From the NCBI GenBank assembly GCA_044892505.1, contig CM097883.1, forward strand, positions 450,740,001 through 450,804,000: a DNA stretch of 64,000 nucleotides, in the 5' to 3' direction. The DNA is from Schmidtea nova. Its lineage: Eukaryota. Below are positions 27,002 to 46,976 of this stretch, in pieces. The translations under genes were made by a program, and so were the position numbers. Position 1 is the stretch's first letter. Each line of letters starts with the position of its first letter. Below the pieces are notes generated by a model that saw nothing but the letters and a program-made list of their open reading frames with translations, was not told the DNA's origin and ran no database searches.

Positions 27002-30000
27002 TTACGAGAAGCACACGCGACCCAGGTCAAGGCCGAATTGCTGATCCTTTGAGCGGCCGATATCAAGCGCAATATCCCTAATTGGCAAACGGAGAGCCTC
27101 AGTGTCCATCTCCAGCTCTGTACTGCTTGTCAGCTCTGCCGAGTTCTGAAATAGTCAAAACATGTTATTTCTGAAGCCGTAATTGCAATCTGAACCTTGC
27201 ATCCATCCCGGTTGACTGAGTATTTCAATAAGGATCCCTCACTAAGCACTTCCTCTTCATGGTCGGTATACAGCACTGCGGGATGGGCGGCGTTACCAAC
27301 CACTGATAAATTACGGCAATTTATTTTTATCCGTTGCTTAGCGGTGGTGCTCAACAGCTTGAGGAACATGAGCTGACTGGCCTCGATCTGATAATCAAAC
27401 TGAAATAGGAAATTGCATTATTTGATTCGTTCCACATAGATAAACAAAAGGGAAGTCCCCATACTGGCAAATATTGAGCCAATCACCAGCAATATAAATA
27501 TCAATATTGAGCCAATCACCAGCAATATAAATATTCAGCCAATCACAAGCAATATAAATACCAATATTCAGCCAATCACAAGCAATATAAATACCAATAT
27601 TCAGCCAATCACCAGCAATATAAATATCAATATTCAGCCAATCACCAGCAATATAAATATAAATATCCATCCAATCACCAGCAATATAAATATCAATATT
27701 CAGCCAATCACCAGCAATATAAATATCAATATTCAGCCAATCACCAGCAATATAAATATAAATATCCATCCAATCACCAGCAATATAAATATCAATATTC
27801 AGCCAATCACCAGCAATATAAATATCCATCCAATCACCAGCAATATAAATATCAATATTCAGCCAATCACCAGCAATATAAATATCAATATTCAGCCAAT
27901 CACCAGCAATATAAATATAAATATCCATCCAATCACCAGCAATATAAATATCAATATTCAGCCAATCACCAGCAATATAAATATAAATATCCATCCAATC
28001 ACCAGCAATATAAATATCAATATTCAGTCAATCACAAGCAATATAAATATTCAGCCAATCACCAGCAATATAAATATCAATATTTATCCAGTCACCAGCA
28101 ATGTAAATATTCAGCCAATCACCAGCAATATAAATATCAATATTCAGCCAATCACAAGCAATATAAATATCAATATTCAGCCAATCACCAGCAATATAAA
28201 TATCAATATTCAGCCAATCACCAGCAATATAAATATCAATATTCAGCCAATCACCAGCAATATAAATATCAATATTCAGCCAATCACAAGCAATATAAAT
28301 ATCAATATTCAGTCAATCACAAGCAATATAAATATTCAGCCAATCACCAGCAATATAAATATCAATATTTATCCAGTCACCAGCAATGTAAATATCAATA
28401 TTTAGCCAGTCACCAGCAATATAATCGCCGCCCCCGAAATCACATAAAATATAGGATTGCACACCCTGTGCATGCCAGTGATTTCACCGAACCACAATTG
28501 ATCTCCACTGATATCGGTGTTCCAATGTTTCAATTCATAATGTGATGATTTAGGCTCAATGCATGTCTCCTTAGCCCGGGCGCGACACAGAACCCGCACG
28601 GCGTCATCGGCCTTGCCTCCATTGGGATCGACATAATAGAATCCTGCCCGATTATCATTAGATTGTCACAATTCAGATAATCCCCTGCTCACCATCTGCC
28701 AAATCCGAATTCGAATTGAATAAATGCTTGCAGGTTCTCGCCGGAATTTCCTTCGTTCCCAGCGGCTTCTTTACAACATCGCTTCCTAGATATTTGACTG
28801 CCAACGCGTCGTCATTCAGAAGGTCGCGTCTAGCTGTTCGGACCGGGAAGAAAACTGCTGGTGGTCCTGGGGGGCCCGGCGGGCCTGCATTTCCAACCGG
28901 TCCAGGTAATCCAGCTGGCCCGTCTCTCCCAGGTAACCCGACAGGGCCAGGAGCTCCGTTATCCCCTGGGAACCCCTTGGTACCTGTTGGCCCGACTGCT
29001 CCTTGTATGCCCGACTCACCGGGAGGGCCGTTATTGCCGGCCGGTCCCCTGTCCCCAGGATCCCCCCTTGCACCGACTTTGCCCTTCGAGCCGGGATTGC
29101 CAACCGTTCCCATCCACCCCGGATGCCCAATCCCCCCGGATTTACCAGGAGAACCAGACCGACCAGGTGCTCCATCTTTGCCGTCTTTCCCATTTGGACC
29201 AGGTTTACCGGACTTCCCGGGTTTACCTTCAGAACCGGAGTTTCCTCTTTCTCCATCAGGCCCTCTTTTCCCCGTTGGACCAGGAGAACCATCAACACCA
29301 ACACCTCCTCGATCTCCGGTAGGACCGGTCGGGCCTTGCGGACCTGGCGGCCCTTCAGTTCCTTCTGGTCCCTGAACCCCTAGATGCCCTGGAGACCCCT
29401 CAGGTCCAGCCGCACCAGTTGGGCCTTGATTTCCGACAGGTCCAACGGGTCCCATTTTCCCTGGTGAACCTCGAGGACCTTTCTTACCTGGGAATCCGGG
29501 ATTCCCCTGAGGTCCAATACTTCCTGGAGGCCCGGGTGGTCCCATGGGGCCAGAAGTCCCCGGATCACCTCTGATTCCCTTAAATGAAAATATGAGTGAG
29601 ATAATCAAAAACGCTAAATCTGAATCTATATTCACACAATTAGTGACACAATCAATTCTTTGAGAAATGAAAAAAATATTAATCAACAATTTAAAAAAAG
29701 TAAAATTGTAGATAGAATGAGTATCACCGTGCTATTAATGCCAATGATAATGGTTCCGGTATAACACCTTACGGCTCACCCTTCACGAGCCAGATCAGCT
29801 AAGCATCATCAGGAAGATATGGAATATAATCCATGTGGAATGACAACCATTTTCATCCTGAACAAATCTTTACAAATAATTCTGATTTCGTGATGTAGAA
29901 ATAGACAAAAATGGACAAATATTTGGTCCGATTGCAGAATTGTTGATAACGGATAGAAACTGTGAGAATAATATATATCAGTGATGGGCAACGTGTGGAT

Positions 30001-45800: not shown

Positions 45801-46976
45801 GGTTTTGTTAGAAATTTCATAATTTTGATAGGGTCCTGATGTGTGAGTTATCTTATTATGTTCTAGGGATGTATTTCATCGATCCAAATGGAGGTCATTG
45901 GAAGGACGCAATTCATGTCAATTGCAACTTTGACAGGTTGGAAACATGCATTGACCCAGAAGTGGCTAATTACAAAAAGACTTCATATACCAAAACTCAC
46001 ACATCTTGGTTCAGCGTTCTAGCAAGTCTCAACAAACAAGTATTCTATTTGAAATCCTTTGAAGGTCCGGTTCTATTGTTAAATAGATTTCATACAAAAT
46101 TCCAAAAGAGCAATTAGTATTTTTGCAACTTTCCAGTGAAAGTTCCTCCCAAACTTTGACTTTGTCGTGTGACCAAATAGCCCTTGCTGCCGATGATTCT
46201 ATCAACCAGGAAATCCGGTTCAATAATTCCGTGCAACTGTTTGGAGATGACAACCAAATTTTGACTGTCAACAATGAGGATGAATTGTTCCAATATAAAG
46301 TTTTGGAGGACACGTGCAAGGTGATGAATTACATTTTATATATTATCTGTACTAGGGATGCCAGATTTGACAAATGGTAAGTTGGGAGAAATGATAATTT
46401 GAATAAATTGAAGGAAAAGCAGAAAGAGTTCTTTATTTGCGACAAAAGTTCAAACTAGAAGCCAGTCTACATCTTGTGTGTTCTTTATCCTTTCTTCAAC
46501 GCATTATTAATCCTTTTAAAGAAATGGACACCTTATGACCATAGTCTTTCATTGACTTTCAATTTAAAGACTTGTCTCACTTTACTTCTTCTTCAATTGA
46601 ACAGTTGCGCGGATGACCTTGAATCTTTCCTTGAGCAGAAAGAAAACAATAATGTGTCTCCCTTTATATCGTTTATATTTCCTATTGTATAATTATGTTT
46701 TCAAGATTTTAATTATTATTTTAGGACAAGTCTAACAACGGACGAGTTGTGATAAAGGTAGAACTAGATCGACCAAGACGTCTCCCAATAAGGGATTTAA
46801 ATTTCAAATCTCTCGGTGATTCTCAGTCAGCAGTGATTGGTGTTGAAATAGGTCCAGTTTGTTTCAGTGGACTGAGTGAAGAATCTAAAAACCAAGCAAA
46901 GATTCAACGCCAAAAAAGAGAAGCCCCAACTGATATTAGTTTGAAATCATTATTATCCATTCTATCGCAGTGGTAA
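39809..46976 (+). CDS. Fibrillar collagen alpha chain 'B' with vWC N-propeptide, ~1534 aa, 18 exons: 39809-39893, 40426-40620, 40675-40688, 40879-41109, 41153-41251, 41297-41557, 41606-41758, 41802-42458, 43213-44535, 44579-45064, 45110-45181, 45229-45390, 45440-45457, 45507-45563, 45613-45745, 45867-46039, 46087-46320, 46725-46976
   Basis: Signal peptide [28 protein letters not shown]; vWC (C...CMTCKC...C...C...C...CCPTC); minor triple helix; 339 uninterrupted Gly-X-Y triplets; COLFI (PARSC...[15 protein letters not shown]...ETC...LPIRD...IGPVCFS). Junctions are GT-AG and frame-consistent. Confidence 0.93.

What the first reader, a model, noticed from the sequence alone, without database searches (positions are those of the whole stretch)
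27002..46976. Head-to-head pair of fibrillar collagen genes sharing a 519-bp intergenic region
Seen: two complete COLFI collagens diverge from 39289 and 39809, one with a minimal N-propeptide and one with vWC plus a minor helix; their major helices are nearly equal in length (~337-339 vs 339 triplets). Known: head-to-head pairing with a bidirectional promoter is the hallmark of type IV collagen genes, while vertebrate fibrillar partners such as COL1A1/COL1A2 are unlinked. Inference: a co-regulated heterotrimer locus, i.e. a collagen-IV-like arrangement for fibrillar chains.
Basis: partly seen in the sequence, partly recalled or inferred. Interest (0 to 1): 0.75.

Follow-up and report, generated by a model that had tools for sequence, protein, structure and literature searches.

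The report
Head-to-head planarian fibrillar collagen pair
Two complete fibril-forming collagen genes of a planarian flatworm really do sit back to back with only 519 bases between their start codons; they are the counterparts of the published muscle collagens colF-3 and colF-4, but whether the two proteins assemble together is untested.

Summary
Gene A (minus strand, 27002-39289, 13 coding exons, 1316 aa) and gene B (plus strand, 39809-46976, 18 coding exons, 1532 aa) are intact fibrillar procollagens that diverge across a 519-bp spacer between their start codons.

All N runs lie in introns. The gene models match the published Schmidtea mediterranea proteins colF-3 (1318 aa) and colF-4 (1531 aa) in length. 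Their first ~170-400 residues are roughly 90% identical by eye. The colF-3 cDNA reads straight across the junction that the largest gapped intron interrupts.

In S. mediterranea both coding sequences lie, in opposite orientation, on one de novo transcript contig (dd_Smed_v4_649_0_1), and their gene numbers are SMESG000026649 and SMESG000026651. I infer that the pairing is conserved and the spacer is transcribed. Both genes are muscle-expressed, and colF-3 protein is found in planarian matrix.

A shared promoter region is therefore likely but unproven. No RNA run was available here and no muscle motif is enriched in the spacer.

The heterotrimer idea is unsupported:
- Equal helix length is generic to fibrillar collagens.
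- Nine of the 11 planarian fibrillar collagens are co-expressed in all muscle cell types.
- Gene A's helix has three imperfections, gene B's has none.
- Both C-propeptides lack the interchain cysteines.

No paper I could search describes a head-to-head fibrillar collagen pair. Moderate interest.

The parts
39226..39289 (-). Gene A exon 1: ATG and signal peptide ([21 protein letters not shown], ends in phase 1)
   Evidence: donor GTGAGT; matches the start of S. mediterranea colF-3
39077..39171 (-). Gene A exon 2: minimal N-propeptide ([32 protein letters not shown]) with a dibasic RIRR furin-like motif; no Pfam domain
   Evidence: near-identical in colF-3
38647..39006 (-). Gene A exon 3: short non-helical lead ([15 protein letters not shown]) plus the first 35 triplets of the major helix
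   Evidence: junction to exon 4 seen in the colF-3 cDNA
33161..38646 (-). Gene A intron 3 (5486 nt), holding four N runs (36288-36420, 37897-38088, 38133-38291, 38298-38501) and transposon remnants (GIY-YIG ORF 35208-35882; IS1595-like DDE 36548-37525)
   Evidence: GTAAAT..TTAG boundaries
32864..33160 (-). Gene A exon 4: 33 triplets
32592..32817 (-). Gene A exon 5: 25 triplets plus the first base of a Gly codon (phase 1)
   Evidence: the join gives GFPGARGPQG as in colF-3
32163..32548 (-). Gene A exon 6: helix, with the Gly-to-Met imperfection MQP at 32280-32288
31703..32116 (-). Gene A exon 7: helix, with the Gly-to-Ala imperfection AVD at 31847-31855
31399..31654 (-). Gene A exon 8: helix, with the 7-residue break SFSGRSG at 31481-31501
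30907..31346 (-). Gene A exon 9: 49 triplets (the first Gly codon is split with exon 8)
28693..29578 (-). Gene A exon 10: last 80 triplets, C-telopeptide and start of the COLFI domain (Cys1)
   Evidence: 78% identical to P0001
28465..28643 (-). Gene A exon 11: COLFI (profile 42-100); Lys at the position of vertebrate Cys3
27196..27399 (-). Gene A exon 12: COLFI (profile 116-188)
27002..27145 (-). Gene A exon 13: end of COLFI (...GRVCFS) and stop codon 27002-27004
39290..39808 (.). 519-bp ATG-to-ATG spacer (GC 0.29). It must hold both 5' UTRs and, most likely, both core promoters
   Evidence: covered without differences by the X4 contig; in S. mediterranea the equivalent stretch joins both CDS in one transcript contig
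39809..39893 (+). Gene B exon 1: ATG and signal peptide ([28 protein letters not shown], phase 1)
   Evidence: matches colF-4
40426..40620 (+). Gene B exon 2: VWC (cysteine-rich) N-propeptide domain
   Evidence: Pfam VWC E 3.4e-5; colF-4 is annotated 'Nterm vWC'
40675..40688 (+). Gene B exon 3: 14-nt micro-exon (KKQRR)
   Evidence: found only by using the colF-4 cDNA (CPTCI-KKQRK-LRDYP); GT..AG and frame fit
40879..41109 (+). Gene B exon 4: Thr-rich linker and the 13-triplet minor helix
41153..41251 (+). Gene B exon 5: non-helical link between the minor and major helix (N-telopeptide region)
   Evidence: identical stretch in colF-4
41297..42458 (+). Gene B exons 6-8 (41297-41557, 41606-41758, 41802-42458): major-helix triplets 1-119, all phase 0
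42459..43212 (+). Gene B intron 8, containing the 725-N run 42480-43204
   Evidence: GTAAGT..TTAG; total protein length of 1532 vs 1531 aa leaves no missing exon
43213..45390 (+). Gene B exons 9-12 (43213-44535, 44579-45064, 45110-45181, 45229-45390): major-helix triplets 120-339 and the C-telopeptide
45440..45563 (+). Gene B exons 13-14 (45440-45457, 45513-45563): two small acidic linker exons, predicted from GT..AG, frame and total length only
45613..46976 (+). Gene B exons 15-18 (45613-45745, 45867-46039, 46087-46320, 46725-46976): COLFI domain plus a ~40-residue C-terminal extension after ...GPVCFS; stop 46974-46976
   Evidence: Pfam COLFI in all four exons; the colF-4 COLFI domain ends 36 residues before its C-terminus

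Best explanation
The window comes from a planarian flatworm, a close relative of Schmidtea mediterranea. The two genes are the orthologues of its muscle-expressed fibrillar collagens colF-3 (gene A: minimal N-propeptide, helix with three imperfections) and colF-4 (gene B: the genome's only VWC-bearing chain, perfect 339-triplet helix). They are ancient paralogues, with only 30% identity in the C-propeptide and no shared helix intron position. They are arranged head to head with 519 bp between their start codons.

Each gene's upstream region is the other gene, so both core promoters and most proximal control elements must lie in or overlap this spacer. An alternative is a 5' non-coding exon sitting inside the partner's first intron, which would give overlapping divergent transcripts. 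Either way the pair is most likely driven by one shared, bidirectionally active, muscle-type regulatory region.

- Shown: the anatomy, gene integrity and orthology.
- Taken from the literature on the orthologues: expression in muscle, one transcript contig spanning both coding sequences, and colF-3 protein in the matrix.
- Inferred: that the spacer acts as a common promoter, and that the pairing is kept for that reason.
For: - **Gene models.** All splice sites are GT..AG and lengths are 1316 and 1532 aa. COLFI and VWC domains are present, and the C-propeptides match solved human C-propeptide chains.
- **Orthology.** Cote et al. [quoted passage not shown]) [quoted passage not shown] The N-terminal ~170-400 residues shown there are roughly 90% identical to my models by eye. 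It is the only such two-protein contig in that table.
- **Expression.** In the same paper colF-3 and colF-4 probes label colF-2-positive muscle cells (411/465 and 110/110), and only one colF gene has a VWC domain.
- **Protein.** colF-3 protein was detected in decellularised planarian matrix.
- **Junction.** An independent-sample contig spans it without differences.
- **Genomic background.** Gene order erodes fast within Schmidtea.
Against: - No RNA run holding this locus was found, so no transcription start, strand or level was seen here.
- Head-to-head order in S. mediterranea is inferred from the contig notes and neighbouring gene numbers, not from its genome sequence.
- A merged de novo contig could also reflect low-level read-through in a very highly expressed locus.
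- No TATA, E-box, MEF2 or CArG enrichment was found in the spacer against 560 background windows.
- Codon and intron composition differ sharply between the two genes (GC3 0.22-0.62 vs 0.03-0.22). That would be unexpected if both were under identical expression-linked pressures.
- A 0.5-kb spacer is a tiny target for rearrangement, so conservation between close species is weak evidence of constraint.
Confidence: 0.75

Rival explanations
1. Co-regulated heterotrimer locus. colF-3 and colF-4 would be the two chain types of one heterotrimeric fibrillar collagen, and the divergent pairing would serve to balance their output, as for COL4A1/COL4A2.
For: - The anatomy is the same as the collagen IV pairs.
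- Both orthologues are expressed in the same muscle cells.
- One chain has a full N-propeptide and one has almost none, reminiscent of different chain types within one molecule.
- The helices are 1018 vs 1017 residues.
Against: - A helix length of about 338 triplets is common to nearly all fibrillar collagens, so equality is uninformative.
- Nine of the 11 planarian colF genes share the same muscle expression.
- Gene A has two Gly-to-X triplets and a 7-residue break, which shifts the Gly register by one, at places where gene B is perfect.
- Both C-propeptides have six cysteines and lack the two interchain ones, so the published cysteine rule (PMC6181919, abstract) does not mark either chain as an obligate partner.
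- No protein-level data on trimers are available.
Confidence: 0.22
2. Passive relic. The pair would be left over from an old inverted duplication or a chance juxtaposition. Each gene would have its own independent core promoter and control elements, the chains would act in separate molecules, and the closeness would have no regulatory meaning.
For: - In the small C-propeptide tree the two genes fall in one group with the other flatworm-like sequences (UFboot 92 / SH-aLRT 85, with a long-branch warning). That is compatible with a lineage-specific duplication.
- Very different codon and intron composition.
- No shared motif signal in the spacer.
Against: - With 519 bp between start codons, two fully independent promoters have little room.
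- Both genes are active in the same cell type, and one transcript contig bridges them in S. mediterranea.
- The pairing persists in a genus with fast gene-order erosion.
Confidence: 0.2
3. Assembly or scaffolding artefact. The 5' end of gene A (38502-39289) would have been wrongly joined, across the N runs, to an unrelated collagen body, or the junction with gene B would be chimeric.
For: - Four N runs lie between gene A exon 3 and exon 4.
- Composition differs between the genes.
Against: - The S. mediterranea colF-3 cDNA joins exactly these two exons.
- Model length is 1316 vs 1318 aa.
- The phases are compatible.
- The junction 38623-40864 is reproduced without differences by a contig from another sample.
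- The spacer itself contains no N.
Confidence: 0.02

Closest known systems
Schmidtea mediterranea colF-3 / colF-4 (Cote, Simental & Reddien 2019, PMC6453901; SMESG000026651.1 and SMESG000026649.1; GenBank MK430150 and MK430151)
   Same: They are orthologues of gene A and gene B. They share the domain layout, have almost the same length (1318/1531 vs 1316/1532 aa), and are roughly 90% identical in the N-terminal parts that could be read. Both are on one transcript contig in opposite orientation, and both are expressed in muscle.
   Different: They come from a different species. The paper names the genes and flags the two-protein contig as a technical note. It never describes a head-to-head fibrillar pair or a shared promoter, and only remarks that planarian collagen IV genes are not head to head.
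COL4A1/COL4A2-type collagen IV gene pairs (also Drosophila Cg25C/viking, from my own knowledge)
   Same: Two collagen genes on opposite strands diverge from a very short spacer. In human the spacer is 127 nt with a shared bidirectional promoter (PMC3459649).
   Different: Those are network-forming collagen IV chains with NC1 (C4) domains, proven promoter sharing and proven alpha1-alpha1-alpha2 heterotrimers. Here the chains are fibrillar (COLFI), and promoter sharing and co-assembly are untested. In planarians the collagen IV genes themselves have lost this arrangement.
Vertebrate COL3A1-COL5A2 linkage (from my own knowledge: adjacent, tail to tail on human 2q32; linkage noted in PMC8887668)
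   Same: Two A-clade fibrillar collagen genes are immediate neighbours.
   Different: That pair is tail to tail, tens of kilobases apart, with no shared promoter, and its products belong to different collagen types. Here the pair is head to head with 519 bp between the start codons.
A-clade fibrillar procollagens (types I-III, V alpha2; VWC N-propeptide, minor helix, ~338-triplet major helix, COLFI)
   Same: Gene B has every one of these modules in the canonical order.
   Different: - Only 7 helix exons, of 72-1323 nt, not the 54-bp-based exon pattern.
- Six rather than eight C-propeptide cysteines.
- A ~40-residue tail after the COLFI domain.
- Gene A lacks the VWC domain and the minor helix altogether.

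Membership tests
Fibrillar (fibril-forming) procollagen | C-terminal COLFI (NC1) propeptide domain | tested here: met
   Pfam PF01410 is hit by each of the four C-propeptide exons of both genes, together covering profile positions 18-233 (A) and 2-233 (B). phmmer matches to the human alpha1(III) and alpha1(I) C-propeptide structures 4ae2 and 5k31.
Fibrillar (fibril-forming) procollagen | Long major triple helix of about 338 Gly-X-Y triplets, essentially uninterrupted | tested here: met
   Gene B has 339 perfect triplets. Gene A has 1018 residues with two Gly-to-X triplets and one 7-residue break, so it meets the length criterion but is not perfect.
Fibrillar (fibril-forming) procollagen | Signal peptide and N-propeptide preceding the helix | tested here: met
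   Both genes have hydrophobic N-termini. colF-3 and colF-4 were scored signal-peptide positive in the published table (SignalP D 0.907 and 0.804). I ran no predictor myself.
A-clade fibrillar collagen | VWC domain and minor helix in the N-propeptide | tested here: met
   Met for gene B only: VWC E 3.4e-5 (24.5 bits, below the 27.6 cut-off for the single exon) and a 13-triplet minor helix. Gene A has neither, so its clade is left open.
A-clade fibrillar collagen | Phylogenetic placement with A-clade chains | tested here: inconclusive
   The 30-sequence C-propeptide tree places A and B together with unnamed flatworm-like sequences, apart from the few named vertebrate chains. The tool warned about long branches, and too few named references were available.
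Head-to-head collagen gene pair with bidirectional promoter (collagen IV type) | Opposite strands, divergent, spacer well under 1 kb | tested here: met
   ATGs at 39289(-) and 39809(+), 519 bp apart, with no N in between. The stretch is reproduced by an independent contig.
Head-to-head collagen gene pair with bidirectional promoter (collagen IV type) | Spacer shown to drive transcription in both directions | not testable with these tools
   No RNA runs were found. The only indirect evidence is the single S. mediterranea transcript contig carrying both CDS. The motif scan was negative.
Head-to-head collagen gene pair with bidirectional promoter (collagen IV type) | The two products co-assemble in one trimer | not testable with these tools
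   Sequence gives no support: mismatched helix imperfections, and both chains lack Cys2 and Cys3.
Head-to-head collagen gene pair with bidirectional promoter (collagen IV type) | Arrangement conserved across species | tested here: inconclusive
   Conservation in S. mediterranea is inferred from the contig notes and gene numbers. Other flatworms could not be reached: three protein searches and three locus look-ups gave no usable relatives.

The most novel reading that the evidence does not exclude
colF-3 and colF-4 would be the two chains of an obligate heterotrimeric fibrillar collagen made by planarian muscle, with their stoichiometry set by a single bidirectional promoter. That would be an independent reinvention, for fibrillar chains, of the collagen IV gene-pair logic, in a lineage whose collagen IV genes have lost that arrangement.
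Probability: 0.2. Interest if true: 0.65.

Novelty: new variant of a known kind. Interest (0 to 1): 0.45.

Why it matters
Head-to-head pairing with a shared promoter is the textbook signature of collagen IV genes. It is usually explained by the need to make two chains of one trimer in a fixed ratio. A conserved fibrillar pair with the same anatomy, in an animal whose collagen IV genes are not paired, offers a natural test of that explanation.

Planarians have the tools to run that test: RNAi, FISH, single-cell atlases, matrix proteomics and ATAC-seq/ChIP-seq for four Schmidtea species.

There is also a practical point. Because both genes sit on one reference contig (dd_Smed_v4/v6_649_0_1), published single-cell and bulk counts lump colF-3 and colF-4 together (one search lists 'colF-3; colF-4' as one row). 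Their individual expression has therefore never been measured by sequencing.

Tried and rejected
- **Read laying.** Most laid pieces were 20-nt chance matches, and a filter hid many contigs. Only one informative contig was found, X4 on 38623-40864. Depth there means nothing.
- **Relatives and synteny.**
  - The representative search with gene A's COLFI exon gave one close relative, P0001 (75-78% identity to gene A's C-terminal part by tblastn), and a distant one, P0016. Both are UniParc-only with no contig on record.
  - Word searches with the P0001 and P0016 C-propeptides and with gene A exon 3 found no further flatworm relatives. My 1e-8 threshold was too strict for a 120-residue collagen query.
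  - The length window of that tool excludes full-length collagens, and no stop-free reference longer than 441 aa exists here.
  - An exact look-up of the 425-aa ORF was not on record.
- **Protein Atlas.** The look-up gave only generic COLFI/GON clusters.
- **Spacer scans.** The sigma-70-type promoter scan is irrelevant for an animal. A scan for E-box, MEF2, CArG, TATA, GATA, GC-box and CCAAT gave nothing above background. One 11-bp CArG-like palindrome at 39412 (background fraction 0.027) is not significant after nine tests. Inverted repeats in the spacer are short and AT-rich. The best pair merely covers the two similar AAACATGATT start contexts.
- **Literature.** 'fibrillar collagen' with 'head-to-head' or 'bidirectional promoter' gave only collagen IV or irrelevant papers among the 25 top-ranked of 130, plus 12. 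The fibrillar collagen review, the lamprey synteny paper and the Nematostella matrisome paper do not mention such an arrangement. 'colF-3'/'colF-4' occur in no searchable main text.
- **Helix imperfections in S. mediterranea.** I tried to check whether gene A's imperfections and gene B's gap junction occur there. The CDS column of the held supplement is cut at about 400 residues.
- **Bdelloid rotifer or parasitic helminth origin.** I considered these before the earlier-findings notes pointed to a planarian. They are rejected by the match to S. mediterranea colF-3 and colF-4.
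Full report
**What is in the sequence**

A scan for Gly-X-Y runs in all six frames finds collagen coding sequence in only two blocks. One is on the minus strand between 28859 and 38961, the other on the plus strand between 40996 and 45327. The window is AT-rich (GC about 0.3) and carries twelve N runs. I built both gene models by hand from reading frames and GT..AG boundaries.

Gene A (minus strand) has 13 coding exons from the ATG at 39289 to the stop at 27002-27004 and encodes 1316 aa:
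- a signal peptide;
- a propeptide of about 31 residues with an RIRR dibasic motif and no Pfam domain;
- a 15-residue non-helical lead;
- a 1018-residue major helix;
- a COLFI C-propeptide split over four exons.

Gene B (plus strand) has 18 coding exons from the ATG at 39809 to the stop at 46974-46976 and encodes 1532 aa:
- a signal peptide;
- a VWC domain;
- a 14-nt micro-exon;
- a Thr-rich linker and a 13-triplet minor helix;
- a 33-residue link;
- a perfect 339-triplet major helix in seven phase-0 exons, one of them 1323 nt long;
- an acidic C-telopeptide region;
- a COLFI domain in four exons;
- a tail of about 40 residues.

Pfam confirms COLFI in all eight C-propeptide exons and VWC in gene B. 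The central COLFI exons match the solved human alpha1(III) and alpha1(I) C-propeptides. The start codons are separated by 39290-39808, which is 519 bp.

**The gaps**

Every N run inside the finding lies in an intron:
- 30110-30335 and 30440-30633 are in gene A intron 9.
- The four runs between 36288 and 38501 are in gene A intron 3 (5486 nt). That intron also holds a GIY-YIG ORF and an IS1595-like transposase remnant.
- 42480-43204 is in gene B intron 8.

The flanking exons end and begin on complete triplets or in matching phase. I did not fill or look up any gap. Two independent arguments say nothing coding is hidden in them. First, the helices already have the canonical length. Second, the models match published cDNA-based proteins of a sister species, as described in the next section.

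**Which organism and which genes**

Protein searches gave almost nothing. There was one UniParc fragment, P0001, at 75-78% identity to gene A's C-terminal part, and a more distant one, P0016. Neither has a contig on record.

Earlier notes of this scan on other windows of the same genome call it a planarian. That led me to the planarian matrisome paper by Cote, Simental and Reddien 2019 (PMC6453901). Its Supplementary Data 1 prints the first ~400 residues of each Schmidtea mediterranea collagen.

- colF-3 (SMESG000026651.1, 1318 aa) begins [40 protein letters not shown]... It is about 92% identical to gene A over the first 173 residues by my manual count of 13 differences.
- The colF-3 sequence runs ...[22 protein letters not shown]..., which is the junction of gene A exon 3 and exon 4 across the gapped intron.
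- colF-4 (SMESG000026649.1, 1531 aa, 'Nterm vWC') matches gene B equally well. It also revealed the KKQR(K/R) micro-exon that I had missed.
- Model lengths are 1316 vs 1318 aa and 1532 vs 1531 aa.

At this level of identity the window is probably from a close relative of S. mediterranea rather than that species itself, but I did not determine the species.

**Conservation and transcription of the pair**

[quoted passage not shown] The FISH table labels them dd_649 and dd_649r, and a differential-expression table lists 'colF-3; colF-4' as one row. It is the only two-protein contig in that table.

Two complete coding sequences in opposite orientation on one de novo transcript contig, with gene numbers two apart, are what a head-to-head pair produces when RNA reads cover its spacer. 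I therefore infer that the arrangement is conserved in S. mediterranea and that the spacer is transcribed there. I did not see that genome, and the order cds1-reverse then cds2-forward is my reading of the labels. A chimera through shared collagen k-mers seems unlikely because both coding sequences are complete.

Gene order erodes quickly within Schmidtea (PMC11410931). However, a 0.5-kb spacer is a very small target for rearrangement, so this conservation is only weak evidence of constraint.

In my own data, one contig from an independent sample (run X4, 2261 nt) lies on 38623-40864 without any difference. It bridges gene A exon 3, the spacer and gene B's first three coding exons. Other contigs were hidden by the tool's filter, so holes there mean nothing.

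**How it most likely works**

Both orthologues are expressed in planarian muscle. colF-3 and colF-4 probes co-label colF-2-positive cells (411/465 and 110/110), and muscle is the source of all 19 collagens. colF-3 protein was found in decellularised matrix (PMC8503668).

Each gene's upstream region is the other gene. Both core promoters must therefore sit in, or overlap, the 519-bp spacer, unless a 5' non-coding exon lies in the partner's first intron, which would give overlapping divergent transcripts. A shared bidirectional muscle-type control region is the best-supported mechanism, and I put it at about 0.75.

It remains inferred:
- No RNA run was available.
- The spacer shows no enrichment of TATA, E-box, MEF2, CArG or other motifs against 560 background windows.
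- The two genes differ strongly in composition. Gene A has GC3 of 0.22-0.62 and GC-rich short introns in its middle; gene B has GC3 of 0.03-0.22 and introns of GC 0.08-0.32.

**The heterotrimer inference**

I find no support for it:
- Near-equal helix length is the family norm and does not identify partners.
- Nine of the 11 planarian fibrillar collagens share the same muscle expression.
- Gene A has Gly-to-Met and Gly-to-Ala triplets and a 7-residue break that shifts the Gly register by one, at positions where gene B is perfect.
- In both C-propeptides the position of vertebrate Cys3 is Lys or His, and no cysteine lies between Cys1 and the DPNGG motif. Each chain therefore has six cysteines and lacks both interchain ones. 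The cysteine rule for homo- versus heterotrimerisation (PMC6181919) does not discriminate between them.

The C-propeptides are only 30% identical and no helix intron position is shared, so the paralogues are old. A small tree groups them with the other flatworm-like sequences (92/85), but with long-branch warnings.

**Comparison with what is known, and novelty**

The anatomy is that of the collagen IV pairs, where human COL4A1 and COL4A2 are 127 nt apart with a shared bidirectional promoter (PMC3459649). The chains here are fibrillar. Cote et al. state that planarian collagen IV genes are not head to head. From my own knowledge, vertebrate fibrillar genes are either unlinked or, for COL3A1 and COL5A2, tail to tail.

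Within what I could search, nothing described a head-to-head fibrillar pair:
- full-text searches for 'fibrillar collagen' with 'head-to-head' or 'bidirectional promoter';
- the fibrillar collagen review;
- lamprey and Nematostella studies;
- the gene names themselves.

The genes are known and their adjacency is implicit in a supplementary note, but it has not been pointed out or interpreted. I rate this a new variant of a known kind, of moderate interest (0.45). It is a clean, conserved, experimentally tractable case, but the functional claims remain open.

Noticed in passing
window 31400-32550 versus 39809-46976: There is a strong compositional contrast between two genes 519 bp apart. Gene A's middle exons have GC 0.6 (GC3 up to 0.62), and even their two 46-48-nt introns are GC 0.5. 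Gene B's exons have GC3 of 0.03-0.22 and its introns GC 0.08-0.32, in a genome of about 0.3 GC. Because introns are affected too, this looks like a regional process, such as biased gene conversion, rather than codon selection.
   Followed up: partly
window 27470-28424: A 33-nt minisatellite of about 30 copies (88% matches, with a higher-order 225-nt period) fills most of the intron between gene A's second and third C-propeptide exons. It creates a spurious 199-aa ORF.
   Followed up: partly
window 35208-35882 and 36548-37525: Gene A's 5.5-kb intron 3 holds two transposon remnants: a GIY-YIG ORF (weak Pfam hit, Penelope-like endonuclease type) and three consecutive minus-strand ORFs, one of which has an ISXO2/IS1595-like DDE transposase domain.
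   Followed up: partly
window 25443-26417: Just 3' of gene A lies a remnant of an LTR retroelement pol gene, with RT-RNaseH and integrase core domains.
   Followed up: partly
window 38623 (run X4 contig): The independent contig covering 38623-40864 starts with 19 letters of the Tn5 mosaic end. The 2024 runs of 'organism A' therefore look like Tn5-based libraries, possibly ATAC-seq. If so, their coverage over the spacer could be read as accessibility, which contigs cannot show.
   Followed up: no
window 46860-46973: Gene B carries a basic/acidic extension of about 40 residues after the canonical ...GPVCFS end of the COLFI domain. The published colF-4 domain table (COLFI ending 36 residues before the C-terminus) suggests it is conserved. 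Its function is unknown.
   Followed up: partly
window 3927-5288, 7399-7881, 15627-18647: Other genes in the window: a 453-aa RING-finger ORF, an exon encoding the end of a nuclear-receptor zf-C4 DNA-binding domain, and a 1006-aa GC-rich (0.58) ORF.
   Followed up: partly
published S. mediterranea reference contig dd_Smed_v4/v6_649_0_1: colF-3 and colF-4 share this reference contig, so published single-cell and bulk RNA counts merge the two genes. One table row reads 'colF-3; colF-4'.
   Followed up: partly
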